From Sminthopsis crassicaudata (lineage: Eukaryota), in contig NC_133620.1 in the NCBI RefSeq assembly GCF_048593235.1, forward strand, positions 476,254,865 to 476,318,864: a DNA stretch of 64,000 nucleotides, given 5' to 3'. Every line of letters begins with the position of its first letter. Position 1 is the stretch's first letter. The position numbers and the translations under genes were made by a program. Below are positions 3,315 through 47,854 of this stretch, one piece after another. The notes below the pieces were generated by a model. The model saw only the letters and a list, made by a program, of their open reading frames with translations. It was not told the origin of the DNA and did no database searches.

Positions 3315-3400
3315 ACGAGTTTGCAAAAAATAAAACAAAGAAATTTCCAGAAAGAACAATATACCCCAAAGGGAAAAAAGACCATTAAGGATATTGCATA

Positions 3401-3542
3401 GGGGCAGCTAGATAGTGAAGTAGATAGAGCACTGGGCCTAAAGTTAGGAAGACCTAAATTCAAATCTAGCCTCAGACTTAAACCTTATTAGCTGTGTGAC
3501 CCTGAGCAAGTCACTAAACCCCAATTGGCTCACAAAAAAAAA
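3401..3542 (+). mobile_element. WSINE1-like CORE-SINE (more diverged)
   Basis: GGGGCAGCTAG...AAATTCAAATCTAGCCTCAGAC...AGCTGTGTGACCCTGAGCAAGTCAC...poly-A. Confidence 0.85.
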
Positions 3543-6934: not shown

Positions 6935-8601
6935 AAAAAATATATGCTTTTGGCAATATATCACAGACTTTGGAGTAAAGTAAATAACTTTAATTAGAAG
7001 CTAATTGAGTTCATGTGGTTAATTAATATTGTTATAATCAATGGAGGAAGCACACCAATGGAGTTCATGAACTATAATNNNNNNNNNNNNNNNNNNNNNN
7101 NNNNNNNNNNNNNNNNNNNNNNNNNNNNNNNNNNNNNNNNNNNNNNNNNNNNNNNNNNNNNNNNNNNNNNNNNNNNNNNNNNNNNNNNNNNNNNNNNNNN
7201 NNNNNNNNNNNNNNNNNNNNNNNNNNNNNNNNNNNNNNNNNNNATGCTTCTGAGGAAAAGGAAGAAGCTTCAAAGTCCCAATCGTTCCCATGAAACCTTC
7301 AGGATCATTTGGCAATAAAGGATCCTCAGTGTCTCTCCAGGAACCCCCCTTTCCCCTCTCCCTCTCTTTTTCTCTCCCACATACAAACTTTCATAAAGGA
7401 CTGAAACAAAATAAGCAAATCACAAAGCCACGGACACCTCTGATGAAATTATGATTCGGTAAAAACATATGGAACATACAGTTCTATAAATGTCAACGTT
7501 CTTATCGACATTGGCTCAGATATGTGTGGTGAGTCCCGAGACCATGGATTCTGGGAGCTCCCAAATACAATTGTGAAAACATAAAGGAGGGAGGAGGGAC
7601 ATGGAGTGAGGCCCTTAGCAAGCTCGGGATGGGAGCTGAACTTTTATGGAATGAAAAAAGATGCCCCAAGAAGTCTCCCAAGCCCCTGAGAACAGAAGCC
7701 CGGGGAAGCCCGGCACTGCCAGGAGAAGACTGTGGGCTGCTCTTTACAGAAGAGAGAGAGATTGGGGTAATTTGGCTGCCTGGCCAGAGGCTGCAGGCGG
7801 GAAGGGGGAGAGGCCCGTCTTCACGTGCCCCATGGGAGGCCCGTGTTCTGCTGTCAGCCGGTGCCTTTGAGGCAGCCTGGGGTGTGGGGTCCAGAATCCT
7901 GGGCTTCGAGTAAGGCAGAGCAGGTTCCGCTGCCATCCCAGACACTTCCTAGCTGTGGCCCTGGGCCTGGAAGTGATCTCTGTGCTTTTCTAGGTGGGCT
8001 CTGGGGTAACAGAGATTGAGCCCCTGGAGTCCGGCAGGGCCGGTCAGAGTCTTCCCTTCTGGCACAGACTACAAGAACCCATAGCCCTCGGAACCTCCAA
8101 GTGGACTTCAGCAAAAACATCCTCCTCGGCCACCAAGGTACCGCCCGACCCCAAACATTCTGTGGGAAGGGGCTGGTCCACGGGAAAGCCCTGGAGCCCT
8201 GGGGCTTGGGTTCCAGTTCTGCCTCCAACACTAACTTCCAGAGCCTCCCTATACTCTTCAGTAGAATGGGGACAGTAGACCGGGCGGCCTCCGCTCCCTT
8301 CCGGTTCGTAAGCTGAGATCCCGCGAGTAACACGGGCTCTTGTCCTGGGGAGAGGTCAGAGCTGCTGCGTTCTCCCTCTGGGGTCTAAACTCCAAAGGCC
8401 GCTCCATACCGCAGCATTTTCATGAGACAGACTTGGCAACAAATATTTGCTCCGGGGTCAATGTGAGCGGCGCTGTTTGCTGAAAAGTGGCGACAGGGGC
8501 CAGGCCAGCGTCAGAGGGAAGGCCGCACTGTAGGGGACGCTTCATCTCCTGGGAAGCCCCCCGGCTCTGATCGGCCTTCACGGCCCGGACAGACGGCAGT
8601 C

Positions 8602-8653
8602 ATGGAGGCGCTGGCGATAATCGCTCTGGCTGCGAACATCTGGGCTGGCACAG
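8602..8653 (+). CDS. SPP2: SPP2 exon 1 (signal peptide MEALAIIALAANIWAGT)
   Basis: ATG in GTCATGG context. Hydrophobic leader. Phase-1 donor GTGGGC. Confidence 0.85.
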
Positions 8654-11600
8654 GTGGGCTCTCTCCCTAACCCTAACCCTAACCCTCCGCTTACTTCTAG
8701 TCAGCTCAGCTGGTGACTCCTTGTCTTCCCTCCGCCATTCAGGCTTCCCGGTGTACGACTACGACCCAGAAATGATGCGGGAAGCTCTTCGGGCCTCTGT
8801 GGAAAAAGTGAACGCCCAGTCTCAGAGCCCAAACCTGTTCCGGGCGTACGCGAGCTCAATCAAAAGAGTGAGTAGATTCCCAAGTGCATTGGGCTGGGTT
8901 GTTTTGTGCAGGTTTTCCTACATTTCGATTTCTTTTTTGTCAATATTGTCATCTGCAGAGATAATTTAAAAACCAGAACAGTCTCTAATTGTGTGGGGAG
9001 GACAGCCCAACATAGAGAGCCCCAGTGAGACGCTTCCTCTCCCAGCACACACCTTCTCTGCAGTTTAGGGTCTCCGTGAGTGGCCCGGGGCACGTCCAGG
9101 GTCATCCGGCCAGCGTGCATCAGGGACGGGCTTCTGGCAGGTCTTCCTGACCCAGTGGCCAGCTCAGGCTCCCGCACCGCAGACGTCTCTCATTTGATGC
9201 TCAGTCTGGAGAATGACAGCCCCTGGCTGTGGATAGGATTCGAGAAAAGTCATTGTCCAAGTCTCACTTTCTCTGACACTCACCCTCCTCTCCCACCCCT
9301 TACTTCCCCTGATTCCTCTTCCCCCCCCCATGGTCACCCCTCAGTGCTCAGACCCAATCTGGGTGGCCCCAGAGGGCGGCTCTCAGGCCACTGAGACATA
9401 AACTGTCATCCGTTGTTTGGGGAAAAAGGAGTCCAAAACTGCGATTTGAGAAATTAGTTTCCTTGAGATGATGAGGCTCCTGTCATTGGAGCGCTTCATC
9501 AGAAGCTCCACGAAAGATTGTCTGGGATGTCGGGGAACAGAGGGATGGACTGAATGACCCAGAAGGTCAGAGCTGGAAGGAGCCGTCTCGTCCAACGCCT
9601 TCAGTGCAGAGATAAGGAAGCCGGGGACAGAGAAGTCACAGCGAGTCCGTCAGTGGCGCAGCTCGGGCTGGGGCTCGCGGCTCCCCGGCCAGGGCCCCTT
9701 CTGCAGCGTCACCCGCCCGTGCCTGAGGCTCTACGGTGCTACTCGCTCAGGGCAGGAACCAGAGCCTTGGGCACCTCCTCGGACACCACCATCTCTGCCC
9801 TCAGGGCCTTTGCCCTGGCTGTCCCCCTCCCGGTTGTGTTCTTCCTCCGCAGGGCTGCCTCATGTCTCCGGCTCCCTTTGAGAATCAACTGAATCGGCCT
9901 TTTCTAATGCCTCGAGCTGCTAACGCCTTTCCCCAAGAGTCCCTTTTGTCCCAGAGACACAGACGTGTACAGACTATGTATAATGTATATAAGCACATCC
10001 ACGTGTGGGCCTATACCGTGTGGGCAGCTAGTCTGTACACGTCATCTCCGGCATTTCAGTTAAGACCCCTGAGGGCAGAGGATATTGTGATTTTTCTTTG
10101 TATCTTTACTGCTTAACACAGTGAAGAGCACGACAGCATGACCAGCTGCCCCGATGGGGACCCAACTGGAACAGGCCAGCTGGGCGACACACGTCCCCCT
10201 TCCTTCTTTTGTTCCCTACTTCCCTTTCTTCCTTCTTTCCTTCCTTTTTTTATTTCCTTCCCTCCTTCTGTCACTTCTTTCTTCTATCCCTCCCTCCCTC
10301 CTCCCTTCCTTTCTTCCTCCTGCCCTTCCTTCTTTCCTTCCCTACTTCCCATCCTTCCTTTTTTATTTCCTTCTCTCTTTTCTTCTGTCCCTCCCTNNNN
10401 NNNNNNNNNNNNNNNNNNNNNNNNNNNNNNNNNNNNNNNNNNNNNNNNNNNNNNNNNNNNNNNNNNNNNNNNNNNNNNNNNNNNNNNNNNNNNNNNNNNN
10501 NNNNNNNNNNNNNNNNNNNNNNNNNNNNNNNNNNNNNNNNNNNNNNNNNNNNNNNNNNNNNNNNNNTGCCCTCCCCTTCTTTCCCTTCCTTTACCCTATC
10601 TTTTCTTTCCTTTCCCTTCCCTCCCCGCTCTCCCTCTATCCCCACAGTGAGCACCTGGGAGTGCTCTGACCACGGGACGTACATTGTGGTCATGGAGACC
10701 TTGCAAGATCTCCAAGCTTGGGGGTCTGGGATGTTTTTAATGAGGTAAAAGGCCACTCTCTGCCCCATTCACTAGCCGGCCTTCGGCACTACATGGGCAG
10801 GTGCCTCAGTCAGGCTGAGAGACTTGAGCTTCAGGGCCAAGGTCTCAATGCATCGGGGCCGTCTCCAGCTGTCCTGATCTACATCTTGCTACTGGACTCA
10901 GAGGGCTCTGGAGGGGAACGTGAGGCAGGTGACGTCGCACCCCTCCCTCACTTCAATCCAATCCACGGCGAGTCTAGACATCGCCCCATGACATCATTGG
11001 TCTTCCCCCTTAACAGTGCTTGGTGTGCAGTAGGTGCTTAATAAATGCTTATGGCCTGTTTGCTCCCGACCCTTCAGTACAAGCAACAAAGTCAGGGAGC
11101 CTCTTAAGTACCTTAGCTTCAGATCTGAAAGATTGAGGAGATGGAGAAGTAACGAAAGGCAGCCGCTGGGGCACATGGAGCCGGGCTGGCTCCCCCCTGT
11201 GACCCCACTTCTGGGGGCTCCTCCCTGCTCTCCCTGGAAGCTCTGGCAGCTCTCGGCCATCTCTGGCTGGCAGTGGGGGACCCCCACACCAAAGAAATTC
11301 CTTGTCAAACTCGTCCAAAAATAGGGTTTAAAACCAGAAAGTTCAGAGATCTTATGAGAGCCATTGCCCCCCTGCGGCAAGGAGGAGAGGCTCCTTAAAG
11401 CTCTAACTCTAACCCTAAATTCGCCTTCCGACTCTATCACGTCCTTAAAGCGGAGATCAGCCTGGGTGGGGCTGGCCAAGGGGGGCGAATGACTCCGGAA
11501 GCGTCTTCTTCATGGGCGCCTTGGCTAACTGCAGGGACTTTCAGGCTGAGAAGCGGTCAGTGGGCAGCACTTAGGGCCCCTCTGTGTGGCGGGCATCGGG

Positions 11601-14600
11601 GCCACAGAAACCAGGGAGAGCCAGCCTGGCCCCGGGAGCCCCGGAGCAGCGGGTAGGTGGGAACACCCGGGTCCGACGTGTCGCAGGGAGAGGGAATGGG
11701 GGCGTTCGTCAGCCGAGGGCGCCCCCCACTTCCCAGCGGGCGCTGACTCTTCCCTCCCCAAGGTGAACTTCGTGAATGAGAACGAGCTGACCATGGACAT
11801 CGACTTCAGGATCCGCGAGACCGAGTGCGGGAAGGAGGCCGGGGGCCCGCCGAGAGCCTGCAGTTTCCGGAGGGGCCACTCTGCGGTAAGCCAGCTGTGA
11901 CCGAGCCCGTCCTGGGGTTCTGCCGGGCTCCAGGTCTCACCCCCAGGACCGGGAGGTCCCAAAGTTAAGGCAGAGGCAGCTTGCCCAGAGGGGGGGGCTG
12001 GGAGACTAAGGAAGGGAAGGGGCGCACACCGGCACCCTGGGTCCGGGAACAGGAGCCCGGCCTGGCGGGTGGGGCTTCTGACCCTGTCGTGGTCCGGGGT
12101 GACTTACATGTGCCCCCACACCCAGCCCTCAATGGCACCATTACGGGGTGGGGGGCGCCCTTCAGGCAGGTTAAGGAGCTGGCCGCCCCCACTGCAGCCT
12201 TGGTGCCCCACCGACCCCCAAGCTCTGCCCGCGTGGATGGCGCCGTACGTCGGGCTGCCCGTGTCCTTCTGGCCAGCTTCGTGGCCGCAGACTCCATCCC
12301 CAGATTAGCAATTTCAGGGTTGCTGTTTTCTGTCGTTTATGAGGTGCTCCTGTCCTGAATAACCATGTAGCCCCAGCAAAGGGGGGGGACCCTCTGGAAT
12401 AAAACACACGCTGGTGGATTAATATTCACACACCCCAGGCCCCAGGGACAGACAGACAAATGGACAGACGGACGATGGATGATGGATGGAGATAGCAGAC
12501 AAATAGGAGAGGGAGAGATTGCACATATATTAAGCACTTAGTATACAGCAGGCACTAAGCCCAGGGAATGCAAATATAAGCAAATATAAGCCTCCCCCCC
12601 CCCAAGGAGCGTCCGCTCCCCTGGGGAAGGCCAGCACGTGAAAGGAAGCTGAAAGGGGAGGGTTTGGGACCTGGAAGGGGGAGGCCCCGCACAGCCAGGA
12701 CCAGGAGCGGGGAGAGGGTGAGCGTGGCCGGCTCGGGCCCTCCCTTTGCCTCTGGGCCCGGAGCTCGCGTCGTTCGAAGCGTTTCCCTGGCCGGACGTGG
12801 CCGGCAAGCTCCAGGCCCGCCCTTTTCTGTCCACGTCTGACAGCCAACAGCCTCCTGCAGGAGCACGGTGCAGATCTCCAGGGAGCGGGTGCAGAACGTG
12901 TGGGTGCGCTGCCACCGCGCCTTCCCCGGCTCCGATTCCAGTAGCAGCGAAGAGGTGAGTCCAGGCCTGGGGCACGGGGCTCCGGGGGGGCTGGTGTCTC
13001 TCCCGCGAGGAGAAAAGGGTGTGATGGGCCCAGCTGGACAAATGAGCCGACCCAGCAGGCCGTGGGGCTGCTTCCGGGCCACCCTGTCAGTCACCCGCGG
13101 CAGCTTCCTAGAAATTCTCCTCGGCCAAGTCGGCTCTGAGACACCACAGAGAGAGACGGCCCCCTGCCAATCCCGGGACTTCCCAGGGGCAGCCTCCTCC
13201 CGCCCAACCCCGTGTTGCTCAGGCCTTAACCCCTCCTCCCCACAGGCCCCTCAGACAAAAGGGCCTGGCTTCTTTCCCGGCCTTCGCCCTCTGTAACGAG
13301 TGCCCTGGGACTCATGGGCGCAGCCCGCGTACGCCAGCCTGAGTCCGGCAGAGAGCGCGCCTCCCTCATCGGGGCAGTCCTCCCGTGCTCAGGCGCCCCG
13401 GGGCCTCTGCTGCTCTCCTGCCAGGGGGTGCTCGCGGCCCCGTGCCGCTCCCGAGGCGAGGAGGGGACCCCAGTGGCCTCCTGATCCCTGGGACAAAGGG
13501 CTGGCTCTGCCAGGACCCGGGAGGGCCTGAATGGCCTCTGTCCGCCTCTGCCTTTCTCTAGATCTTTGGGAGCCGGCTGGGACCGTACAACTGGAGGAGC
13601 TTCCACCCGAGAGGTCAGCGGGGAGCGGGGGCGTCCTTGGGCGACCTTTCCGGCAGAGCCCCGAGGCTTTGTGCCTTACGTGATCGTGACCCAAAGTCGC
13701 CCGTGCAGAGCGCTGGGTCGGGGGTCCCAAGCCACGCAGGCCAGTCCGGCTATCGTGGTCATCCTCACTCACGGCCCCTGGAGGCTCATGAGGCCCTTTA
13801 CATGCAGTATTTTATCTAACTTGATTCTCAGGGAAAAGGCTTCTCTTATTATCCCCATTTTACAGATGGGGCAACTAAGACTGAGAGGTTAATCCCAATG
13901 TCTCTGGGGGCAGCTAGGTGGCGCCATAATTCACTTAGCACCAGGTGAGTTCAACTCCAGCCTGAGATATTAGCTGCGGGAGCCTGGCCAAGTCACTCAA
14001 CTCTGTGTGCCTCAGTTTTCTCATCTGTAAAATGGGCTGGAAGGAAATGGCCAAGCCCTCCGGCTCCTTTGCCCAGAAAACCCCAAACGGGGTCACCATG
14101 AGTCAAAACTGAGCTGAACGCTGAGCACCCATTACTCCTGATCCTGCCCTCGGGGGTGCTCCAGGGATCAGCTCCCAGCGATGATTCTTTTAAATTGGCG
14201 CCCTTCCTGAAGGCAAGGGCCCTTTCACCTGTGCCTTCGCCGCCTCAGCTCCCAGCCCAGCCCTCCTGAGCAGTAGAAGGATCGGTGCCCGAGGTGTGGG
14301 AGCCGGGGCGGGGCCGGCGCTCTCTGAGAAGTCTGGGCCCGGGCCCTTGTTTTGCAGATATGGACAGCGCTGAGTCCAGCAGTGAGCCGCTCTATCAGAG
14401 GTCGCTGGGTAAGTCTCCGCATGCTCTGCTCTGGGACCCTCCTGGGACCCTCCTCCCGTGGCCGGCACTCTGGTGGGAACGAGAGGGGGACGCCCTGGCG
14501 CCCGCCTGTGACCTGCTGACCGATGGGAGAGGGAGGGGAGCCAGCTTGGCTTTGCAGGTCACTTGTTTAGATCCACTTCGAGGGGCTGCACGGTGGGCAG

Positions 14601-21300: not shown

Positions 21301-23288
21301 CAGAACGGGACCTGGGCCGTGTAGCCCAGCCCCTCCCCCACCCCGCGGAGGATCTGAACCCAGCCCCTCGGATTCCAAATTCAGCGGCCTCCGGTGGGAA
21401 GAACTCCCCAGAGGAGCCCAAGGCTCCCTGGAGCCAAGTCTGCCTTGACCCGAGGGAGATGGAGCGCTCGCTCCACGAGGGAGGGAGACCTGGACACGGG
21501 AGCCGAGGAGGCCGCCAAGGAAGCACGCAGCAAGCACTTATTAAGCACCTACGGTGTACCAGCCACCACTCTGGGCTCCGAGGGCACAAGGCTTGAGGAA
21601 CTCCCAGTGGAAAGGGGAGACAACAAGGTATCTATCAAGTCTCTAGGTAAAGGGAGAGGACAAAGCAGGTGTGAATGCGAGGCGGCGAGGGCGAGGAGTC
21701 AGGAAAGAATTCCTGCTGGAAGAGGTGGGCGGGGAGGGCGTTCCAGGCAGGAGGTACTGCCCGGGCATCTGCCTGGTGAGGAGAGAGGGGCAGCACGCGG
21801 CCGGCAGCGCGGCGGGGCTCTGCACGGGGCGGGGGGGGGGGGGGGGGAGGGTTCAGCACTGGACAGAGGCACTGAGGGGCCTGACGTGGGGACCTCGGCA
21901 ATCCGGAGAATCGCTGGCGGGGGAGGGGGGGAGTGTGTGAATGGGTGTGTGTGAGTGTGCGATGCTCTGTAGTGAGGAAAGATTGAGCCTGGGAAGTCAA
22001 TCAGATTGTTAATAATGGAGGAGGGCCGAGGTCCTTCCCGGGTACGCGGGTGGCTGTGAGGGAGCTGGAAGAGAACCCCAAATGTGGCAGCTGATTGGCC
22101 CCACCCAGCTCCCAGGCCACGCCTCCCCCTCCAGCCTTCCCCACCAGGAGAAATTGCTGCCCCGGGGCCCTGCTCCCCACAGTGGGGACCCCTCTCCGGA
22201 AACACTCGTTCTGGGTAAACCCCAGCTATGTTTTACCTCCCTCCTGACCCCCCAGACATCTCCTCCTCCTCCTTCTCCTGCTGCTCTGCCCCTCCTAGCT
22301 CATCCCTGTTAGGGATCGTGAAGCCAGATCAGATGTTCCATTGTTCCTGGATAGGGTGTGTCAATCCCCTCCCCCCATTCTATTTTTCTAGTCTCATTTT
22401 TATTCCCTCCCCTCATTTTACCATCTGGCTCCAGCAGCCTCCTCGCTGTTCCCCTGCACAACACCGGGTCCATGCATTGGTCCTGGCTTTGTCCCATGCC
22501 TGGAATATCTTCCCTCCTTCCTGACTTCCTACAAGACTTACTCAGACCCCACCCCCACCTCCCCCAGGGTTCTTTCCAAGTAGCGCTCAGCCTTCCAGAT
22601 TCTGGTGACAATTCTCACTTTCACACTATGGTTTGGCTTTCTAGCTGGAGTTCCAGCTTTTCCGTCTAGCTTTTTCGCTGCATTTTGTAGCTGCAAAGGG
22701 ATAAAGAGATAAACGAGGCTATATCCGTGTTAAAATTCACTTGTGCCAGAAAGGCACGAAGGAAGGAGGAAAAGAAAGGGAAGGGAAGGAGGGGGGGAAG
22801 AAGGAAAGGAGGAAAGAAGGAAGAGAGAAAANNNNNNNNNNNNNNNNNNNNNNNNNNNNNNNNNNNNNNNNNNNNNNNNNNNNNNNNNNNNNNNNNNNNN
22901 NNNNNNNNNNNNNNNNNNNNNNNNNNNNNNNNNNNNNNNNNNNNNNNNNNNNNNNNNNNNNNNNNNNNNNNNNNNNNNNNNNNNNNNNNNNNNNNNNNNN
23001 NNNNNNNNNNNNNNNNNNNNNNNNNNNNNNNNNNNNNNNNNNNNNNNNNNNNNNNNNNNNNNNNNNNNNNNNNNNNNNNNNNNNNNNNNNNNNNNNNNNN
23101 NNNNNNNNNNNNNNNNNNNNNNNNNNNNNNNNNNNNNNNNNNNNNNNNNNNNNNNNNNNNNNNNNNNNNNNNNNNNNNNNNNNNNNNNNNNNNNTGGCAG
23201 AACTAAGCTAAAATTAAGACCCCCTCGCGCTGTTTCAGGTCCAGGGCCTCTCCGGCCTCGTTCCCGGGGCCCCTCGGACGGCCCGAAG

Positions 23289-24347
23289 ATGTCCGGCCTC
23301 TCCCTCTGCTGGGTGCTGGCGCTGCTCTGGCCCCTGGACGCCGGCTCTCCCCCGCCGTGTCCCCGAGCCTGCCTCTGCCAGGAAGCGGCCCGGGCCGTGA
23401 ACTGCTCCGGGGCCAACCTGACCGGGCCGCTCTTCTTCTCCCCGGACACGGAGCGCCTGGACCTGTCCGGGGCGCAGCTGCTGGAAGTCCCGAGCTCCTC
23501 CCTGAGGGGGTTGTGGCGGTTGCAGGTGCTGCTCCTGGGGGACAACCGCATCGGGGGCGTGGGCGAGGGGGCCTTCGGAGGGCTGGAGAGCCTGCGCAGG
23601 CTGGAGCTGCAGCGCAACGGGCTGTCGGAGCTGGGCCGGGGCTTCTCGGCGGGCCTGGGCGCGCTGCGGGAGCTCAGCCTGGCCTCCAACGGGCTGCGGG
23701 CGCTCGGGCCGGGCGCCTTCCGCCACTGCGAGGACCTGCGCGGGCTGGGCCTGCAGAACAACGCCATCGCCGCCATCGCCCCCGGCACGTTCCGGGGCCT
23801 GACGCGCCTGCGGCAGCTGCGGCTGCAGAACAACCGGCTCCGGCGCCTCCAGGACGGCCTCTTCTCCACGCTGCAGCGCCTGGAGCTCCTGGACCTCGAG
23901 GGCAACCGCATCGAGAGCATCGCGCCCGGGGCCTTCGCGGCGCTCCAGAGCCTGACGCTCCTCAACCTGGCGCACAACGCCCTGGGCCGCCTGCGCTTCC
24001 GGACCTTCCTGTCCATCCGGACCCCGGGCACGCACGTGCTGCTGGCCCACAACCCCTGGGCGTGCGACTGTGACCTGCAGAGGGCCTTCGGCAAGCTGCG
24101 CCGCGTCCCCTGGCTCGTCGTGGACAACTACGCCAACGTGACCTGCCGGGAGCCCCCCGTGCTGCGGGGCCTGGCCCTGGGGGACTCGCAGCTCTGCGCC
24201 GCCGAGACCGTCACCGTGCTGGTGGTCACCTTCACCGTCTGCGTCACCGTGGTCGCCGCCATCGTCATGGCCGAGAGGAACAGGAAGCGCAGGACCGGCA
24301 GACACTGGAGCGACGACAGCCCGGCGGCCTGGGAGGCCCCGGAGTGA
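23289..24347 (+). CDS. Uncharacterised LRR type-I transmembrane protein, 352 aa, single coding exon
   Basis: Signal peptide MSGLSLCWVLALLWPLDAG; LRRNT (CPRACLC...VNC); eight ~24-aa typical LRRs (LxxLxLxxNxLxxL); LRRCT (NPWACDC...VTC...QLC); TM helix VTVLVVTFTVCVTVVAAIVMA; basic stop-transfer RNRKRR; ~24-aa tail. A at -3 of the ATG. Acceptor TGTTTCAG at 23231-23238. No stops or frameshifts. Confidence 0.93.
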   Translation: MSGLSLCWVLALLWPLDAGSPPPCPRACLCQEAARAVNCSGANLTGPLFFSPDTERLDLSGAQLLEVPSSSLRGLWRLQVLLLGDNRIGGVGEGAFGGLESLRRLELQRNGLSELGRGFSAGLGALRELSLASNGLRALGPGAFRHCEDLRGLGLQNNAIAAIAPGTFRGLTRLRQLRLQNNRLRRLQDGLFSTLQRLELLDLEGNRIESIAPGAFAALQSLTLLNLAHNALGRLRFRTFLSIRTPGTHVLLAHNPWACDCDLQRAFGKLRRVPWLVVDNYANVTCREPPVLRGLALGDSQLCAAETVTVLVVTFTVCVTVVAAIVMAERNRKRRTGRHWSDDSPAAWEAPE

Positions 24348-24464
24348 ACGGCCCGGCTCCCCGCCCCCCCCCCCCCCCAGCCTCCTGGAGCTTCTGCGGG
24401 AGACTGAGGTCACACGGGGCGTTCCCAGCCCCCCATCTCCCCCCCAGCTTCCAGCAGAGCCTTC

Positions 24465-24600
24465 TATGCTCATTTTACAGAGGGAGAAACTGAGGCAAAC
24501 AGGGACGTGGCTCACTCAGGAGTGAGTTTCTGAGGCCAGATTTGATGTCAGGAAGACTAGTCTTCCTCCCGCTCCAGACCGGGGGCTCCGGGACACTGCA
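24465..24600 (-). mobile_element. MIR/MAR-type CORE-SINE in the LRR gene 3' region
   Basis: CTCATTTTACAGAGGGAGAAACTGAGGC is the reverse CORE, followed by reverse SINE head-like sequence. Confidence 0.7.
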
Positions 24601-24621
24601 CCGGCCGGCATAGCTAATGAT

Positions 24622-24627
24622 AATAAA
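24622..24627 (+). terminator. Candidate poly(A) signal of the LRR-TM gene
   Basis: First AATAAA after the stop, about 275 nt downstream. Confidence 0.5.
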
Positions 24628-25889
24628 TAGTGACCCAGCCCCGGCCAGCAGGAGGCGCCCCTCGGCCTCCGCAGAACCCGGGGACACCACAGGCATCTTC
24701 CCTGGAGAGCCCCAGGAGCTGCGGTCCAGCAGGCACCAAGGGGGGATGCTCCGGGTGCGTCCTGTGTGAATGAGGGCTCCCAGGCTCGCTCGGCCCCGGG
24801 CACACACAAACAAGGAAAGGGCTCGGGCCCCATCCCCTCACCCACCCCCGGAGCGGGACCCGAGTTCAGGGCTCCCACCACTCCCTCCGCAGCACCTCCA
24901 GGGGGGGCCGTGTAATTGCTTCTTGAATGTTCCAGGGATGGGGATCTCAGTCCCGGTAAACAGCCCACTTCTTTGTCCCACCAGTGTGATGATTAAAAGT
25001 CTTCCTTGAATTCAGCCCAAATCTGCCTTCCTGTCATGTTCACCCGCTGAACTCTGTCTGAATCCGGAGCTGCTGCCGGCAGCACAGCCCCTCTCCCCAT
25101 GAAGACCCTTCCCATATTTAGACTTTTCCTCATTGCCTTTCTCTCCCTGGCTCCTTATTGCAGCACACAGTAGGAGCTTCATAAATGCTTGTTGTCTGAT
25201 TTATACGTGTGCGTACACACACACACACACTCACACACACTCACACTCACAGATACACTCCCTATTCCAGGAGCTTCAAAAGATCACGAGAGGAGAGACT
25301 GGAGGAATGGTGTCTTTATGGGGCGAGAGCACAGCATCCATCATCAGCCCCCCCCCCAGCCTTTCACCCCCTTACAAAACCCCAAAAAGCTGAGAACACG
25401 CCTGTGTCCATTTTCCCATCAATCCTTGCAGCTGTGACTCTGCAAAATGGCCCCATTGGAAGCAAGCTGCCAGATGAGGCGGGGTCACCTGGGGTGGGCG
25501 GGGTGCGGAGCAGAGCCTGCCCCGTGGGGGACCACAGGAGAGCATCTCACAGTTGAGACTGAAAGCTAGTTTCTAAGGAGAAATGGCGGCGCCTCCTCCT
25601 GCCAGGTGGGAAACTACTGAAGCGTGAGGAGTTCCGGGGAGTCAGCAACGGGCGGGGTCGTCTGCCCCCAACTCTGCCTTAGTCCCCCCCACTCTGGGTA
25701 GTGATGGATGTTCAGGCTTCGATGGGGAGTGAAATTGTAAGCAAATTGGGGGTTTCTTCCGGTGGTTGTTTTTTGTTGGTTCTGCTTTTTTCAAGAGCTA
25801 GACTCGATATTTCCATAAAAGCAGGAAGCCAGGGGCTAACGGGGTCACTTCATTCTACAGCCCAGGGAAGAGTCTTGCCCAGTCACACA

Positions 25890-25983
25890 GCACAGCATGA
25901 GGAGAGGGGGGCCGCACTCTGACCTCTGTGGGGGGGGGCACAGCGTGAGGAGAGGGGGGCCGCACTCTGACCACTGTGGGGGG
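25890..25983. repeat. 48-bp direct duplication (2 copies)
   Basis: GCACAGC(A/G)TGAGGAGAGGGGGGCCGCACTCTGACC(T/A)CTGTGGGGGG at ~25890 and ~25938. Confidence 0.9.
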
Positions 25984-27014: not shown

Positions 27015-27155
27015 TCACTCGTGTTCGAAAAACTCATGGCACGCAGAGGTGATCACGGCGACGAAAGCCACGAACTCCTGGAAGTCGCACTCGGCGTCCC
27101 CGTCCGTGTCCAGGGTCTCCATGACTTTATCCACCGTCTCCTGCTCCTTGATCTC
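27015..27155 (-). CDS. S100B: S100B second coding exon
   Basis: Acceptor TTTCCCTCAG (minus strand), 141 nt, ends in TGA. Confidence 0.97.
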   Translation of the reverse strand, partial: EIKEQETVDKVMETLDTDGDAECDFQEFVAFVAVITSACHEFFEHE

Positions 27156-29661
27156 CTGAGGGAAACAAGGTTAGCAAAAGCGGAGATCAGCCCCGGTCAT
27201 ACTTCCCTCACAGAGGGGGCTGCTCGAGTCAGGGATCCCCAGATCCAAGCCCGGCTCTGCTGCCTTCCACTCCGTCTCTGGATCTGTTTCCTCCTCTGGG
27301 AAATGAGAGCAGATGCCCTCAGATGTCCCTTCCAGCTTCAGGTGAATGACCCTAGAGCTTCTCGGTTTTCTCCTCAGTACAATGAGTGGGTTGGAACAAC
27401 CGGCCTCTGAAGTCCTTTTAGCTCCAGCCCTGACCTGGCAGCCAGGGCACACCCGCCACGGGGCCAGACGTCGGGTCTTTACCACTTGTCATCAAGCAGG
27501 ACTCCGGTCAGTGACCCCATAAACTCCCCATCTAACATGGGGAGTTCGCCTTCCTCTGGGGTTTTTAAAGCTCTTTTGGGAGTCTCCGGGCCCCCTCCAG
27601 GTTTTCCTTCTCCCTCATCCCCTCCTCACTCACCTTCTCCTATGGTCGCACACTCCCAAACGAGGCTCTGTGACTGAGTGGACAGAGGGCTAGCCTCAAA
27701 CCTCACTCCAAGCCCTGCCTCTGAGCCCAGGTGGAGCCCACCTGCCCCAGAGAGCGCAGCCCAACCCCTGGGGGCTCCCTGCCAGCCGGAGTCACGGGCC
27801 CAGACTAGGTTCCCGAGAGCCTGCACTGATGGATGCCCCCCCAGCCGACACGAACCCAGCCCCCCGCTCCCAGGAGGCCCTGGGAGAGCACCCCAGCCTG
27901 GCACTGGCCGGCCCCTCCTCCTGGCCAAACACTTCCATCCCCAGCTGCCAGATGGAAGGACTCTCTCCCCATCTGATCTCCCAAGTGCATCGTGTCTCTT
28001 CATTTATGATCGGCAGCTGGTGGCAGAGGGCACTGAAGGCTGGGTCAAGTCCTGCCTTTGACATCAACTTAGCTGTGTCACCTTGGGCAAGCCATCTGCC
28101 CTCTCTCATTTCCCCATCTGTAAAATGGGGTAACAGCACCCGTTTCACGGGGACACTAAAAATCAAATGGGATTGTGTTAGTGAAGCCCTTGAGAATCTA
28201 AAAGTCCTAGAGATATTATTCTGTCTGTACCTCTCTGTTATTATTCTGTCTGTCTACACCTCTTCATCCCACTAGACTATAGGGAGCTCCTTCATCCTCC
28301 TGGACCAGTGAGAGATGGAGCTAGTGTGGGCCCGGTGGAGCAGATGATCCGGAACAGGCCGGAGCCCCCAACCTCCTGAACCCGGGGCCAGCTCCCCGTC
28401 ACTCTATTGTTTTCCAAATAAATGGGAAGAGTCCTCCCCTTCTCCTGAGACTGTCCCCTGCACTTCCATTCTGGTCCAGAAAACCCGAGTCTGCTGCGGG
28501 GAGGAAGGGGGGGACACAGCCATCGCAGACTAGACAGCTGACCTCAGTGGGCACCGAATGCCCGACCATTTGAGGCCTGGGTGTGCAAATAAGAAAGAGA
28601 AAAGCAGCCCCCGTGCTCAGCGAGCTTGTGCTGCTGGGAGGAAGGACGCCTAAAGTCTTTCTACCTGCCTGAGTATACTGGGAAGAAGCTGGAACTTCAG
28701 GGCCCTGATGACTCCCAGGAGTACTTGCTGTAGTTTCCCTCTGCAGCCCACCTAGTGGAGGAGGAAGCCCCCCCCCCAGCTTCGTGGGGTGCTCCAGCAG
28801 GCTTCCCCACTGCGTCAACTTCTCTGGTGAACGTGTGCAAAGCTCCTCGCCTCCGTAGCTTAGTCCGTTCTCCGTTCCCCGGAGGCAAGCCCTGGCACTG
28901 CCCAGGAGACCCCTAAGGTTCCAGCTGAATACAGGCCCATCTGCTCCAGCCCCAGGAAGAGCCCCTCCCCTCAGTCACGGGTCTCTCTGAAGAGCCAGGC
29001 ATGGGGGGGGGGAGCACTTGTCTCCTCCTGAGCTGGTGAGGGTGGCTGAGGACGGCTGATACTATGCCAGGGGTGCGGTGGGCATAACCAGGTGCGTCCC
29101 GGGCAGCAGAACACGGGCCTGAAAGGCTCACAGGGCCCGTGACAAAGGGCACGGAGCCCCATCCCTCCCCCGGTCCCTCCAAGTTCTGAGGCTCTCACAG
29201 TTCGGTTTGGGTTTCTTTCTGGATTTCCTTTGGAGAGCTGGGCTTAGCAGCACAAGCTAGCTTTGGGAGAGCACGTCACCTCCAGAGCCTCAGCTTCCTC
29301 ATCAGGAAAATGGGCTCAAGAATAGAACTGGGGATAGAGTGCTTCAAAACCCTCAGAGATTTCTATTCATGTCAGGCACTCCATTCCTGAACAGCTACAG
29401 GAGCGCCAGTTCCCACCATCACCAGCCCCATCTTCCCCCGCAAGTGCAGAAGGCCACGGAGCCGCGTGCAGCCCATCCCGGTGGTTCTGGGAGGGTCCGA
29501 AGGGCCCGGGAGGTAACACTCACCCCTAAGAAGTGGGAGAGTTCATTGTTGATGAGCTCTTTCAGCTCTGACTTCTTCAGCTTGTGTTTGTCCCCCTCCT
29601 TCCCAGAGTACTGGTGGAAGGTCTCGATGATGGCCATCATGGCTTTCTCCAGCTCCGACAT
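27015..29661 (-). CDS. S100B: Protein S100-B, 92 aa, two coding exons
   Basis: Exons 29661-29524 and 27155-27015 give [46 protein letters not shown]|[46 protein letters not shown]. The intron is GT-AG. The sequence has a pseudo-EF hand, a canonical EF hand and the diagnostic CHEFFEHE end. Confidence 0.98.
29524..29661 (-). CDS. S100B: S100B first coding exon
   Basis: Acceptor CTTGTGTCCAG 18 nt before GCCATG, donor GTGAGT, 138 coding nt. Confidence 0.97.
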
Positions 29662-30394
29662 GGCGAAGATCAGATGCTCCTGGACACAAGGGGAGGAGAA
29701 AATGGCCCGCCCGGTCACAGACGTCCTTCCTCAGCTGCTCCTCTCCCGGTCCTAATCCCTGGGTGGGACAATGACCGCAATGACTGTGACCACCCCTGGG
29801 GGCAACGTGGCCGGTGGCGACCTCCTCGGACCCTTACAGAGAAGCCAGGTCCACCTGGGGGGGGGGGGGTTTGCTCATAAACCCGTGGGAGATTCCAGCG
29901 TTCGGGCCACCTCTAGAACTCAGAACTTCCTCTGGCCCCAAACCTTCCCAACATGCCCCAGGGGGGTACAGAGAGAAGGAACGGCCCCACCCGGGACTTC
30001 TCACTTCACCAGGATCCGGCCAATGAACAAAGCTCCACGGAAAAGGGGAAAAGAAAGAAAAGAAAAAGGGAGAATGTCCCAGGCCCAAAAGGAGGGGAGT
30101 CCAAGTCCCGCCTGTGGGTTCCAGAGAGGCGCTGTTTTTCCTGGTTCAAATTGTCTTCCTCTGAGGAGGGAGGGGGCAGGGAGAGCCGGTCAGAGCGGAA
30201 GGTTTTGCAAGGGGGAACGCCGGGCACTGTCTTGGCATGGATTTGGAAAAATAAAATGCTACTGAAAACCCACCACAGGGACCCGTGCTCAGCGAAGCCC
30301 CAAGGAAGTGAGCCGCCCACAGGGGGAGGCTTCCCCGTGGGCCTCCACTGCAGTCAGCCTCAGCCCCTCATTAGCAGAGGGGACCAGCCAGAGC

Positions 30395-31610: not shown

Positions 31611-32255
31611 GTGGGGGAGGGGGCCGCTGGGCGGCCGCGGGACTCCAGACGAGCCACCGCCCGGGGAGAAAGACAGAGGCGCTGGGATCCGCCGCGGGGC
31701 GGGCGCTGGGGGGCGCGGTGTACTCCCCCGGACTACTGAGAGGCAGGACCCTGGCGAAGAAGGGCCCAAGAGAGGGAGAGAGGGGGAAGGAGGNNNNNNN
31801 NNNNNNNNNNNNNNNNNNNNNNNNNNNNNNNNNNNNNNNNNNNNNNNNNNNNNNNNNNNNNNNNNNNNNNNNNNNNNNNNNNNNNNNNNNNNNNNNNNNN
31901 NNNNNNNNNNNNNNNNNNNNNNNNNNNNNNNNNNNNNNNNNNNNNNNNNNNNNNNNNNNNNNNNNNNNNNNNNNNNNNNNNNNNNNNNNNNNNNNNNNNN
32001 NNNNNNNNNNNNNNNNNNNNNNNNNNNNNNNNNNNNNNNNNNNNNNNNNNNNNNNNNNNNNNNNNNNNNNNNNNNNNNNNNNNNNNNNNNNNNNNNNNNN
32101 NNNNNNNNNNNNNNNNNNNNNNNNNNNNNNNNNNNNNNNNNNNNNNNNNNNNNNNNNNNNNNNNNNNNNNNNNNNNNNNNNNNNNNNNNNNNNNNNNNNN
32201 NNNNNNNNNNNNNNNNNNNNNNNNNNNNNNNNNNNNNNNNNNNNNNNNNNAGGCT

Positions 32256-32690: not shown

Positions 32691-35600
32691 ACGATAATGT
32701 GGGAAATGACTCTTTTTGGGGTTTCCAGCCTCAGTTTCCCTTNNNNNNNNNNNNNNNNNNNNNNNNNNNNNNNNNNNNNNNNNNNNNNNNNNNNNNNNNN
32801 NNNNNNNNNNNNNNNNNNNNNNNNNNNNNNNNNNNNNNNNNNNNNNNNNNNNNNNNNNNNNNNNNNNNNNNNNNNNNNNNNNNNNNNNNNNNNNNNNNNN
32901 NNNNNNNNNNNNNNNNNNNNNNNNNNNNNNNNNNNNNNNNNNNNNNNNNNNNNNNNNNNNNNNNNNNNNNNNNNNNNNNNNNNNNNNNNNNNNNNGAAGG
33001 GAGNNNNNNNNNNNNNNNNNNNNNNNNNNNNNNNNNNNNNNNNNNNNNNNNNNNNNNNNNNNNNNNNNNNNNNNNNNNNNNNNNNNNNNNNNNNNNNNNN
33101 NNNNNNNNNNNNNNNNNNNNNNNNNNNNNNNNNNNNNNNNNNNNNNNNNNNNNNNNNNNNNNNNNNNNNNNNNNAATCTTGACACAATCTCAGAGTTTCA
33201 GGGTTTCCTGTGACAAAGGCTCCGAGAGTTACTTGCTCCTCACTCCCCACTTGAGCCCCAAAGGACTCTTGGGGCACCAGAGCTCACCCGGCCCTGTTCT
33301 AGCTCTGAGCCCAGACCTGACTCGGTGGGGAAGCCGTTTGAGCCCAGGGCAATGTTTAATAAAGGAACAAGTAAATGATTTATGAGCTGTGGGGAATAAA
33401 AGACTGGGTATGTTCAGGTAACAGCTTCTAACCACACAGCAAAGCCATTGGAAAGCACCGTGGGAGGCCACGGAAGAGCTGCCACCTGGTCTCCGCCACT
33501 GTGACCCCACTGATCTCAGGCCCATCAGTCACTCTCTCTGGGCCTCGATTCCTTCATCGGGAAGATGGGCATGGGCCAGATGGTTTCTGAGGTCCCTTTC
33601 AGTCCTAAGCAGATCCTGGGAAGTCGGGTCAGCTGTTTTCTCCCCGGCCAGCTTGCTGAGTCGGAGGGTCACTTTAACATCCCCAACAAAGGAGAGTGGA
33701 TCGGCTCCTGGGAAGGACCAGGCCTGGGAAAGGAGGGAAGGAAATCTAGTTGACGCGCTGCCTGAAAGCACCCCCCACTGGGTCAGCTTGGGGGGGACCC
33801 AGTCATGAAGGCAGCTCCACTGACGCTGCCCTAACTCTTATCTTTGGCAGAGCTGGCAGGGGCCAGGGGCTGGCATTCAGCCAGGCCGGAGTCCGCCCCT
33901 TTCATTTCCAATCTGACCAAACTAGGGATGCCAGCTTGGCCCTGCTCGCCTCCGGGCCCTGCTCATGACTCCAGAGCCCCAGATAGAAATGTGGGCGCCC
34001 CCACCTCCAATCCAGTCACGGGAACAGAGCTCCGGAGCAGCCTCTGGCCCATCCTAAGTGTGGGGCCCTGGCCAGTCACCCCCTGGCCAGCCCCAGCTTT
34101 CTCATCTATAAACGGGGATCCCGGCAGCGCCTCCCCCTCATGCTTGTCCTTAGGACTGTGATCATATTTCTAAGCTTTTTGCACATCTCCAAATGCTCTC
34201 TAAGTGTTGTTAATTTTAGAAGTAATTGAGGCAGTTTCCCTAGAATTAGAAGAGAGACATCAGGACTCTGTGGATCTTGGGGAAGAGATCTTGGACCCTA
34301 GCTCCAGGTCTGTGAGCTTCCTTCAGGGGAGAAGGGGAGATGGGGAGTAGAATCGAGGCTGGGCGTGGCCCAAGAGATGCTCCTAAGGGGTACAGCTCCT
34401 TTGGGGAGAAGGAGAAGGTAAGCAATCTATAGTTTCCCATTTAATTATTCCAGAATTTTATACATTTAAGGAGTTTGATTGTTACAATGCACAACCAATG
34501 TAAGAATTTTCAAAATCATTCTCTTAAATGCTTTTTTGCACCTTCTAAATGCCAACCCCCCAGACAAGAGCCTGACATCCCACCCCTAGTTTTGGCTAGT
34601 TTTGGATTCTCAGGCTTGATCTGAGTCTCTCCTCCGAGGCACCAAGAGCTCATGATAAGCCCCATCCTGTGCCCACCAGACCTTCTGGGGGAGGTAGGGC
34701 AAAGGTAAGACATGACCTGCTCCAGATCCTGCAAGTTCCAAGCGCCTTCCCCATCCAGGCCATCGGAGACTCTGCACACCAGTAGCTCAAACACTGAGAA
34801 AGATCTGCACCAAAATTCGCCATCATTTCCCCTGGCAAAGAGCGTAAGGCCCTGCGAGACGCCCCCAAGCCCCTTTCTACATGAAACTTTCCTGATGCTT
34901 TTGGCTGCCCCACGAAGCTCGCGTCTGTCAGCGTGGATCTCTGTTCCGTGCTCTTACTCTTTCATCTGCATGCAGGCATGCGGTGTCCATTAGGACCTCA
35001 CGCCCAGAGCTTCTGCATCCCGTGAGTAAGAACTATTTAGTGCCTTTGCATCCACAGCCCCGCTCCAGGCACTGGGTAAATGCTTGCCCGTTGTGTCACC
35101 CGCCTTTCACTAAGGCGCCCACGAAGATGGCTGCCCACTAAAGCTGGCACTCAGGCAGGCCTCCAAGTGAGCTGGTCAGACCCCAGGTCCCGGCCCCGGT
35201 GGGGCTGATTCCATTGTCCCCCAAAGAGTGGGAACAAGAAGTATCCTGGGTCCTGACTTTATTCTCCGGGTACCTGCTGGGGGGCTGTCTTTCATCTGGG
35301 CCTACCTCCTCATCCCAGACCACAGGGCATCCCACCAAGAGCATCTCGCCCTCTGTGTCTCTCCATGGCAACCAAGCTTTGCAGTGGCAAAGTGCCTTTG
35401 CTCCCCGACAGCCCCGACAGTCATTTAAAAGAATGGCGCTCAGACATCCAATCGGAAACCCCAAATGGCTGGAAATGCCCGTCATGGGCCAGGACACACA
35501 TGGGGCGGTCAGCCAGGCCGTGGGCTAATCTGCTCAAAACCAAGGCCGCAGCCTGCGCCCACCCTGGGGGTTCTAGAAGCCAGTCACAAGATCAAATATA

Positions 35601-38738: not shown

Positions 38739-38850
38739 TTTATTTATTGGTTTTGGGCAATTGGGATTAAGTGACTTGCCCAGGGTCACACGGCCATTAA
38801 GGGTGAAATGTCTGAAGCCGGATCTGAACGAAGGTCCTCCTGACTCTAGG
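38739..38850 (-). mobile_element. WSINE1-like SINE fragment
   Basis: GGCAATTGGGATTAAGTGACTTGCCCAGGGTCACAC...GTCTGAAGCCGGATCTGAAC...TCCTCCTGACT is the reverse complement of the SINE body. Confidence 0.8.
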
Positions 38851-47299: not shown

Positions 47300-47344
47300 G
47301 GCTTCGCTGCTGGAGGTTTCGCTGCTGGAGGCTTCGCTGCTGGA
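47300..47344. repeat. 15-bp tandem repeat x3 (GGYTTCGCTGCTGGA)
   Basis: Seen directly. Confidence 0.92.
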
Positions 47345-47767: not shown

Positions 47768-47854
47768 ATGAGGCACGAAGACGACGACCCCAGGGATGAA
47801 GAGCCCCAGCAAGTCCCGGCGCCCCCCCACGGCGCAGCCCCGGGAGAGCCACAG
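47768..47854 (+). CDS. PRMT2: PRMT2 coding exon 1 (MRHEDDDP...GEPQ)
   Basis: Acceptor CCCGGACAG 6 nt before the ATG (A at -3), phase-0 donor GTGATT. Sequence is divergent, so this is the least certain exon. Confidence 0.7.

What the first reader, a model, noticed from the sequence alone, without database searches (positions are those of the whole stretch)
23289..24347. Intact, unnamed LRR transmembrane receptor-like gene at the 2q37/21q breakpoint
Seen: a complete 352-aa ORF with signal peptide, four-Cys LRRNT, eight LRRs, four-Cys LRRCT, three N-glycosylation sequons (NCS, NLT, NVT), an unusually Thr/Val-rich TM helix, an RNRKRR juxtamembrane cluster and a short acidic Trp-containing tail. 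Acceptor, Kozak context and poly(A) signal are all present. Established: I know of no such gene between S100B and its neighbours or beside SPP2 in human or mouse. It is not LRRC3 (far fewer LRRs) and has more repeats than the six-LRR BK-channel gamma subunits (LRRC26/38/52/55), although it shares their LRR-TM-polybasic layout. Inference: an ancestral vertebrate cell-surface protein lost when eutherians broke this synteny. Testable roles include ion-channel auxiliary subunit, adhesion molecule or TGF-beta/BMP-family binder (as in vasorin or GARP), notable next to the BMP-binding SPP2. This is the best candidate for undescribed biology in the window.
Basis: partly seen in the sequence, partly recalled or inferred. 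Interest (0 to 1): 0.85.

Follow-up and report, generated by a model that had tools for sequence, protein, structure and literature searches.

The report
Ancient orphan LRR membrane protein gene
This marsupial gene between SPP2 and S100B is a real, intact member of an unnamed leucine-rich-repeat membrane-protein family conserved from sharks to marsupials; its membrane-spanning helix is almost unchanged across jawed vertebrates, which suggests a still-unknown partner in the membrane, and no placental mammal in the searches carries this copy.

Summary
Window 23289-24347 (+) is an intact, single-exon 352-aa ORF. It encodes a signal peptide, a 4-Cys LRRNT, eight LRRs plus a half repeat, a 4-Cys LRRCT, one TM helix, an RNRKRR cluster and a short acidic tail.

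It belongs to a ~354-aa family found from sharks to marsupials. Databases give the family at least fifteen conflicting automatic names, and I found no paper on it.

The family has two ancient clades:
- Clade A includes this gene. It lies beside S100B and, among mammals, appeared only in marsupials.
- Clade B lies beside TMEM101. Its mammalian members in the searches are colugo, Old World monkeys and horse. An earlier scan note (s1-179189) reports a fossil LRR gene at that site in this same genome.

The ectodomain is Nogo-receptor-like (Z 32, about 32% identity). The most conserved part is the TM helix and juxtamembrane cluster, and its few variable positions fall on one helical face.

The window copy is GC-driven and fast-evolving (GC3 0.98). 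It still keeps 71 of 76 highly conserved columns, and small RNA-type runs hold its sequence.

Best reading: a partner-bound single-pass subunit or co-receptor, built like a BK gamma subunit but not a member of that family. The partner is unknown. Loss in eutherians is supported at proteome level only.

The parts
23289..24347 (+). Complete single-exon CDS (352 aa plus stop) of the clade-A LRR-TM gene
   Evidence: 80.9% nucleotide identity to the Dromiciops CDS
23289..23348 (+). Predicted signal peptide (residues 1-20)
   Evidence: Hydrophobic N-terminus and helix 4-12 in the model. This is the least conserved region. No dedicated predictor was available.
23349..23447 (+). LRRNT cap with four cysteines (C24, C28, C30, C39)
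23448..24023 (+). Eight 24-residue leucine-rich repeats (residues 54-245)
   Evidence: Strand spacing in the AlphaFold model; repeat register
24024..24197 (+). Ninth half repeat plus LRRCT cap (C259, C261, C286, C303). The last cysteine sits three residues before the membrane helix, so there is no stalk.
24201..24275 (+). Thr/Val-rich transmembrane helix flanked by two conserved glutamates (A305-E329); the most conserved part of the protein
   Evidence: Mean column entropy 0.63 bits against 1.68 for the LRRs. Variable positions lie on one helical face (moment 0.51, 0.6% of shuffles reach it).
24276..24293 (+). Polybasic juxtamembrane cluster RNRKRR (residues 330-335)
24294..24344 (+). Short acidic cytoplasmic tail with W340. 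The clade-A signature is diverged in this species.
23233..23239 (+). Candidate 3' splice acceptor (TTTCAG|G) of a 5'-UTR intron
   Evidence: The same motif occurs at a similar distance upstream of the ATG in Dromiciops, offset by a few columns in the alignment. Not verified with reads.
24622..24627 (+). Candidate poly(A) signal AATAAA
   Evidence: Not conserved in Dromiciops and lies just after a dispersed repeat. Unverified.
22832..23194 (.). Assembly gap or masked stretch just upstream of the gene (left unfilled)
27018..29730 (-). Neighbour S100B, tail-to-tail with the LRR gene (coding exons within 29422-29730 and 27018-27170)
   Evidence: Pfam S_100 at 1.6e-21 and an EF-hand hit. Collinear with the Dromiciops locus. 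Same arrangement in Vombatus.
8571..13293 (+). Neighbour SPP2. The second exon is a Pfam hit; the first, which had no Pfam hit, was recognised only by a motif recalled from memory.
   Evidence: Pfam Spp-24 at 7e-9 for 12841-13293; motif scan

Best explanation
The ORF is a functional protein-coding gene. It is the marsupial orthologue ('clade A', S100B-linked) of an unnamed family of type I membrane glycoproteins found across jawed vertebrates.

Shown here:
- The mature protein is a Nogo-receptor-sized LRR solenoid (LRRNT, eight and a half LRRs, LRRCT).
- The solenoid joins a single TM helix with no stalk, followed by a polybasic cluster and a tail of about 20 residues with no recognisable signalling domain.

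Inferred:
- The protein works as an obligate partner-bound subunit, either an auxiliary subunit of a multi-pass membrane protein or a co-receptor.
- The near-invariant Thr/Val-rich helix, its two flanking glutamates and the basic cluster would dock against the partner inside the membrane.
- The rigidly attached LRR domain would sit on the partner's outer face or capture a ligand.
[quoted passage not shown] The family is not a member of that group, and the partner is unknown.

Confidence by part: about 0.9 for the gene's identity and conservation, about 0.4 for the partner-subunit mechanism.
For: Identity:
- Intact ORF with LRR_8 at 1e-40.
- About 100 relatives of roughly 354 aa, from sharks to marsupials.
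- The tree splits clades A and B with 100% support, and the window groups with Dromiciops and Vombatus.
- S100B is the neighbour in all three marsupials.

Constraint:
- dN/dS against Dromiciops is 0.15 (ML) to 0.51 (NG86).
- The window protein keeps 71 of 76 columns that are at least 90% conserved, and its 5 changes are conservative.

Transcription:
- Runs guessed to be RNA, of 62-847 million letters (a fraction of a marsupial genome's size), hold 76-86% of the locus's sampled words.
- Other RNA-type runs hold the neighbouring stretch but none of the gene.

Mechanism:
- The TM helix is the most conserved region (entropy 0.63 bits against 1.68 for the LRRs).
- E306, T307, T309, L311, T314 and V321 are invariant in 63 sequences.
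- TM variability is confined to one helical face.
- The last LRRCT cysteine lies 3 residues before the helix.
- Exposed concave-face LRR positions are no more conserved than the rest (1.97 against 1.94 bits).
- A language-model feature search places LRRC38 and LRRC26 clusters as the nearest named families (0.97).
- An exhaustive search with the LRRCT-TM-tail module found no other family carrying it.
Against: - No partner is identified, and nothing here tests binding.
- TM conservation could equally reflect homo-oligomerisation or a trafficking or quality-control requirement.
- LRRC26 did not appear among PDB sequence or fold matches, so the gamma-subunit parallel rests on layout only.
S100B read-through antisense transcription is not excluded.
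- The window lineage evolves about 3.7 times faster than its marsupial relatives (branch 0.35 against 0.094), with extreme GC3 (0.977) and a GARP fraction of 0.36. Some relaxation of constraint is therefore possible.
Confidence: 0.55

Rival explanations
1. It is an ectodomain-driven cell-surface receptor or adhesion molecule, in the manner of Nogo receptors, LRRTMs, NGLs or FLRTs. The LRR domain binds a ligand in trans. The conserved TM helix serves only homo-oligomerisation or raft targeting, and the basic cluster binds FERM/ERM proteins or acidic lipids.
For: - The best structural matches are NgR1 and NgR2 over the whole ectodomain: Z 32, rmsd about 2.2 A, 277-280 of about 285 residues, 32% identity.
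- LRRTM2 and NGL-3 follow closely.
- The LRRs are moderately conserved throughout.
Against: - Exposed concave-face positions are no more conserved than other positions.
- Conservation rises toward the membrane and peaks in the TM helix.
- There is no stalk, Ig/FN3 domain or PDZ-binding end such as synaptic organisers carry.
Confidence: 0.25
2. It is a true member of the BK-channel gamma subunit family (LRRC26/38/52/55, the 'Elron' cluster) and shifts BK or Slo3 voltage dependence.
For: - Same layout: signal peptide, LRRNT, LRRs, LRRCT, one TM, a positive cluster and a short acidic tail (PMC2235866; PMC8892010).
- LRRC38 and LRRC26 clusters are the nearest named clusters in the feature search.
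Against: - Eight and a half LRRs instead of six.
- No LRRC26 chain appears among the PDB sequence hits, either full length or with the LRRCT-TM-tail module, or among the top 50 fold matches.
- The TM module is not found outside this family.
- No gamma-subunit sequence was available for a joint tree.
Confidence: 0.1
3. In this species the gene is drifting toward loss. The ORF is still open, but constraint has been relaxed and the sequence remodelled by GC-biased substitution.
For: - Long terminal branch (0.35 against 0.094).
- NG86 dN/dS of 0.51.
- GC3 of 0.977, and a GARP amino-acid fraction of 0.36 against 0.14 in turtle.
- The tail signature is diverged.
- The Dromiciops orthologue lies 2.9 Mb from a chromosome end.
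Against: - No stop or frameshift.
- All eight cap cysteines, the LRR asparagines and the invariant TM residues are kept. Only 5 conservative changes occur in 76 highly conserved columns.
- ML dN/dS is 0.15.
- The sequence is present in small RNA-type runs.
Confidence: 0.07
4. It is a TGF-beta/BMP-family binder or latent-complex anchor like GARP (LRRC32), NRROS or vasorin, functionally linked to its neighbour SPP2.
For: Only the general LRR-TM layout and the position next to SPP2. LRRC32 appears among many generic PDB sequence hits.
Against: - GARP, NRROS and vasorin rank far below Nogo receptors.
- The protein is about half their size and lacks vasorin's extra domains.
- Adjacency is not evidence of shared function.
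- In a teleost the neighbour is an MFS transporter, not SPP2 or S100B.
Confidence: 0.03

Closest known systems
Nogo receptor family (RTN4R, RTN4RL2)
   Same: The ectodomain has the same size and fold: LRRNT, eight and a half LRRs and LRRCT. VIA Z is 32 and rmsd about 2.2 A over 277-280 residues, at 31-33% identity. Several family members have been auto-named 'reticulon-4 receptor-like 2'.
   Different: Nogo receptors carry a long stalk and a GPI anchor. This protein has no stalk, a highly conserved TM helix, a polybasic cluster and a cytoplasmic tail. An identity near 32% is not orthology.
BK channel gamma subunits / 'Elron' cluster (LRRC26, LRRC52, LRRC55, LRRC38; LRTM1/2)
   Same: Signal peptide, LRRNT, LRRs, LRRCT, a single TM, a positive cluster right after the TM and a short tail with acidic residues. 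In gamma subunits the TM plus positive cluster determine function (PMC8892010; PMC2235866). They are the nearest named clusters by language-model features.
   Different: Eight and a half repeats rather than six. No detectable specific sequence relation. The TM motif is unique to this family. No channel effect has been tested.
Clade B of the same family (TMEM101-linked; predicted in colugo, Old World monkeys, horse, reptiles, amphibians, fishes)
   Same: Same length and architecture, and a nearly identical TM and juxtamembrane segment. About 42-47% identical to the window protein.
   Different: - Different locus: beside TMEM101 and NAGS in colugo, and beside TMEM101 in a sea turtle.
- Different tail signature.
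- Among mammals it was seen only in eutherians, whereas clade A was seen only in marsupials.
Trophoblast glycoprotein TPBG/5T4 and nyctalopin (NYX)
   Same: TPBG is the best PDB sequence hit for the LRRCT region (E 1.7e-4). Nyctalopins are the best-scoring eutherian proteins outside the family (38-39% identity over 59-69% of the query).
   Different: The similarity is generic to LRR and LRRCT regions. The TM, tail and repeat number differ.

Membership tests
Unnamed S100B-linked LRR-TM family, clade A | About 354 aa: signal peptide, 4-Cys LRRNT, eight and a half LRRs, 4-Cys LRRCT, one TM, short tail | tested here: met
Unnamed S100B-linked LRR-TM family, clade A | Family-specific TM and juxtamembrane signature (C-x-A-E-T-x-T-V-L ... 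M-A-E-R-x-R-K-K) | tested here: met
   The window has conservative I313V and K-to-R changes.
Unnamed S100B-linked LRR-TM family, clade A | Falls inside clade A in a maximum-likelihood tree | tested here: met
   A/B split at 100% SH-aLRT; marsupial trio at 100%
Unnamed S100B-linked LRR-TM family, clade A | Conserved position next to S100B | tested here: met
   Met in the window, Dromiciops and Vombatus. Could not be seen within the 10-kb flanks in turtle, chimaera or tinamou.
BK gamma subunits / Elron cluster | Six LRRs between LRRNT and LRRCT (PMC2235866, PMC8892010) | tested here: not met
   Eight full repeats plus a half repeat
BK gamma subunits / Elron cluster | Single TM followed at once by a cluster of positive residues, then a short tail with acidic residues | tested here: met
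BK gamma subunits / Elron cluster | Closer in sequence to LRRC26/38/52/55 than to other LRR proteins | tested here: inconclusive
   Not among the PDB sequence or fold hits shown. Nearest named clusters in the feature search. No authentic gamma sequences were available for a tree.
BK gamma subunits / Elron cluster | Shifts BK activation to negative voltages on co-expression | not testable with these tools
   Needs electrophysiology
Nogo receptor family | LRRNT, eight and a half LRRs and LRRCT ligand-binding domain | tested here: met
   Z 32, rmsd 2.2 A, whole domain aligned
Nogo receptor family | GPI anchor after a long stalk; no TM helix or cytoplasmic tail | tested here: not met
   TM helix 302-338 starts 3 residues after the last LRRCT cysteine; 23-residue tail
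GARP/NRROS and vasorin (TGF-beta binders) | Much longer LRR horseshoe (GARP, NRROS) or added EGF and FN3 domains (vasorin); this architecture is taken from established knowledge | tested here: not met
   352 aa with eight and a half LRRs and no extra domain. These proteins rank low in fold searches.
LRRC3 family | Small (about 260 aa) with few LRRs; taken from established knowledge | tested here: not met
   Eight and a half LRRs in 352 aa. The LRRC3 cluster ranks below the LRRC26/38 clusters in the feature search.

The most novel reading that the evidence does not exclude
The family is an undescribed class of single-pass auxiliary subunits. Its near-invariant Thr/Val-rich helix would dock into a conserved ion channel, transporter or receptor of jawed vertebrates. 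The two ancient copies would have been lost in a complementary way in mammals: clade A kept in marsupials, clade B kept in a few placentals, and both possibly gone from human and mouse. That pattern would explain why the family has never been studied.
Probability: 0.3. Interest if true: 0.7.

Novelty: new member of a known kind. Interest (0 to 1): 0.45.

Why it matters
Extracellular-LRR, single-pass proteins repeatedly turn out to be channel or receptor subunits; the BK gamma subunits are the case read for this report. This family is as old as jawed vertebrates, and its membrane helix is more conserved than its ligand-binding domain. It nevertheless has no name, no paper that I could find and no Swiss-Prot relative above 32% identity. 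The likely reason is that the model mammals seem to lack it.

If it does bind a conserved membrane partner, that partner's physiology in fish, amphibians, reptiles and marsupials includes a component missing from mouse and human work.

The gene is also a clean example of complementary paralogue retention between marsupials and placentals, and of extreme GC-biased remodelling of a protein that stays constrained.

Tried and rejected
- **Reads.** Exon structure, strand and the poly(A) site are therefore unverified.
- **Transcription control.** The stretch 24760-25960 was meant as a non-transcribed control. Many RNA-type runs hold it, probably as a long S100B 3' UTR or read-through, so it works only as a partial control.
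- **Literature.** Searches by accession numbers, 'lost in eutherians', gene-extinction surveys, Nogo-receptor phylogeny and S100B/SPP2 synteny found nothing on this family.
- **Curated gene name.** I looked for a curated name, zebrafish for example, through cluster look-ups and AlphaFold DB clusters. Only conflicting automatic names or none came back.
- **Further paralogues.** An exhaustive search with the LRRCT-TM-tail module, looking for a third or fourth ancient paralogue or a longer protein sharing the TM, found only family members. It also gave weak LRRCT-level hits to invertebrate and unnamed proteins.
- **Synteny outside mammals.** The 10-kb flanks in turtle, chimaera and tinamou held no neighbouring gene.
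- **Readings rejected.** LRRC3 (too few repeats), GARP and vasorin (wrong size and domains), and a chance ORF in GC-rich DNA (refuted by homology).
- **Rest of the window.** A six-frame scan of 30-64 kb for further genes gave nothing interpretable.

Full report
**Observation**

The window holds an ATG at 23289 and a TGA at 24345-24347, with 352 uninterrupted codons between them. The DNA is 73% GC with GC3 of 0.977. Long ORFs are therefore cheap here: the opposite strand carries overlapping ORFs of 426 and 465 aa. The case for a gene rests on homology instead. Pfam finds LRR_8 at 1.2e-40 and a weak LRRNT. A search of 5.8 billion proteins returns about 100 relatives of about 354 aa.

- Four LRRNT cysteines and four LRRCT cysteines. 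The LRRCT cysteines are invariant in 63 aligned relatives.
- Eight 24-residue repeats, plus a ninth half repeat that merges into the LRRCT.
- Three sequons. The ones at N38 and N283 recur in 32/62 and 46/63 relatives.
- A TM helix, RNRKRR at residues 330-335, and a short acidic tail with tryptophans.

The flanking signals are weaker. An acceptor-like TTTCAG|G lies 50 bases before the ATG, and a like motif occurs at a similar distance upstream of the ATG in Dromiciops. The AATAAA at 24622-24627 follows a dispersed repeat and is not conserved. An N gap at 22832-23194 hides the 5' region, and I left it unfilled.

**What it is**

The closest proteins are from two other marsupials: Dromiciops at 73% and Vombatus at 70%. 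Next come turtles, crocodilians, squamates, a tinamou, salamanders and frogs, ray-finned fishes, sharks and a chimaera, at 47-59%. Their database names disagree completely. They include LRRC15-like, chondroadherin-like, slit homolog, IGFALS, RTN4RL2, LRRC3B-like, GP5, decorin-like and asporin. The family therefore has no curated identity.

A maximum-likelihood tree of 87 full-length members splits into two clades with 100% support. Each clade contains cartilaginous fishes, ray-finned fishes, amphibians and sauropsids, so the duplication predates the jawed-vertebrate radiation.

Clade A holds the window protein. Its neighbour is S100B, tail-to-tail, in the window, Dromiciops and Vombatus.

Clade B lies beside TMEM101 in colugo and in a sea turtle. 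Its mammalian members in the searches are eutherian only: colugo, Old World monkeys, horse and donkey. An earlier scan note (s1-179189) reports a fossil LRR gene between LSM12 and TMEM101 in this same genome. That is the expected site of clade B, but I could not read that DNA. From general knowledge, HDAC4 (2q37) and HDAC5 (17q21, near LSM12) are paralogues from the early vertebrate genome duplications. That would fit A and B being such a pair. This is an inference, not tested here.

**Eutherian loss**

No eutherian protein falls in clade A, while the same searches did recover eutherian clade-B proteins. The best Swiss-Prot structural matches reach only 32% identity. Loss of clade A from placentals is thus supported at the level of annotated proteomes. 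It was not tested on genomic DNA, and its link to the 2q37/21q rearrangement remains an inference. No monotreme member appeared in any list, which proves nothing.

**State of the window copy**

The window branch is 3.7 times longer than those of the other marsupials, and its amino-acid make-up deviates. GARP residues make up 36% of the protein, against 14% in turtle. The Dromiciops orthologue lies 2.9 Mb from the end of a 497-Mb chromosome, a setting in which GC-biased substitution is expected (inference).

Even so, the protein keeps 71 of the 76 columns that are at least 90% conserved across the family, and its five changes are conservative. Against Dromiciops, dN/dS is 0.15 by maximum likelihood and 0.51 by NG86. 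The NG86 value is inflated because synonymous sites are compressed at GC3 near 1.

Five runs guessed to be RNA, of 62-847 million letters, hold 76-86% of the sampled words of 23200-24700. That depth is a small fraction of a marsupial genome's size, so contaminating DNA could not give such coverage. Other RNA-type runs hold the adjacent 24760-25960 stretch but none of the gene. The locus is therefore transcribed in some samples.

**Structure**

AlphaFold with a 63-sequence alignment gives mean pLDDT 87.6. The ectodomain superposes on Nogo receptors 1 and 2 over its whole length: Z 32, rmsd about 2.2 A, 277-280 residues, 31-33% identity. LRRTM2, LRG1, LGR4/5 and NGL-3 follow. Unlike Nogo receptors, there is no stalk. 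The last LRRCT cysteine (C303) is three residues from the start of a 37-residue helix (302-338).

**Mechanism**

Conservation runs opposite to the usual receptor pattern. Mean column entropy is:

| Region | Entropy (bits) |
|---|---|
| LRRs | 1.68 |
| LRRCT | 1.29 |
| Segment before the TM | 0.55 |
| TM helix | 0.63 |
| Basic cluster | 1.04 |
| Tail | 2.34 |

E306, T307, T309, L311, T314 and V321 are invariant in 63 sequences spanning both clades. The few variable TM positions (308, 312, 315, 318/319, 322, 325) fall on one helical face, with a moment of 0.51 that only 0.6% of shuffles reach. Exposed concave-face LRR positions are no more conserved than the rest.

A helix that is invariant around about three quarters of its circumference, polar through threonines and bracketed by glutamates points to specific packing against other TM helices. 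Combined with the rigidly mounted LRR domain and the basic cluster, this is the design of the BK gamma subunits, whose TM segment and adjacent positive cluster set their effect (PMC8892010; PMC2235866). A language-model feature search also puts LRRC38 and LRRC26 clusters nearest among named families.

Membership of that family is not supported:
- This protein has eight and a half repeats, not six.
- No LRRC26 chain appears among PDB sequence or fold matches.
- An exhaustive search of 1.84 billion representatives with the LRRCT-TM-tail module finds the module only in this family.

I therefore commit to 'a partner-bound single-pass subunit or co-receptor, gamma-subunit-like in design, partner unknown' at about 0.4. 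The main rival is an ectodomain-driven receptor of the Nogo-receptor or LRRTM kind, at about 0.25.

**Novelty and verdict**

The gene is real and ancient, and I could find no study of it. It is still one more family within a well-known class, the extracellular-LRR-only type I membrane proteins, and predicted orthologues are already in public databases. I rate it a new member of a known kind, of moderate interest. The interest lies in the exceptional TM conservation and in the complementary retention of the two paralogues in marsupials and placentals.

Noticed in passing
Locus L002 (colugo) 10001-11065; protein clusters: The sister paralogue (clade B) is predicted as an intact protein of about 350-410 aa in colugo, several Old World monkeys, and horse and donkey. 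It lies beside TMEM101 and NAGS and is auto-named 'LRRC26-like' or 'LRRC15-like'. Its mammalian branch is very long (1.11). Whether other placentals keep it was not examined.
   Followed up: partly
window 24760-25960: This stretch between the LRR gene and S100B is held by many RNA-type runs, including some that hold none of the LRR gene. It may be a long S100B 3' UTR or read-through transcription.
   Followed up: no
window 23289-24347: The codon and amino-acid bias is extreme: GC3 0.977, and Gly+Ala+Arg+Pro at 36% against 14% in the turtle orthologue. The bias grades across the three marsupials (0.24, 0.29, 0.36). The conserved core is untouched.
   Followed up: yes
window 24470-24570, also near 1290-1420, 3400-3540, 13950-14100, 38750-38850: A dispersed repeat, which looks like a MIR-type SINE by eye, recurs in the window and in the Dromiciops locus. 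One copy sits in the 3' flank just before the candidate poly(A) signal.
   Followed up: no
window 5279-6478 (+): A 400-aa stop-free stretch that looks by eye like the C-terminal part of a LINE-1 ORF2. It lies upstream of the SPP2 exons.
   Followed up: no
window 7079-7243, 10397-10566, 22832-23194, 31794-32250, 32743-32995, 33004-33174: Six runs of N. The third lies 95 bases upstream of the start codon studied here.
   Followed up: no
window 44000-54000: A 10-kb block of 66-72% GC, with long GC-artefact ORFs rich in Gly, Pro, Arg and Ser and a repetitive stretch around 50.6-51.7 kb. No gene was identified.
   Followed up: no
Hit lists: Among birds, only tinamous (Nothoprocta, Tinamus) appear in the family lists. 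No monotreme appears in either clade. This may reflect real loss or assembly gaps in GC-rich regions.
   Followed up: no
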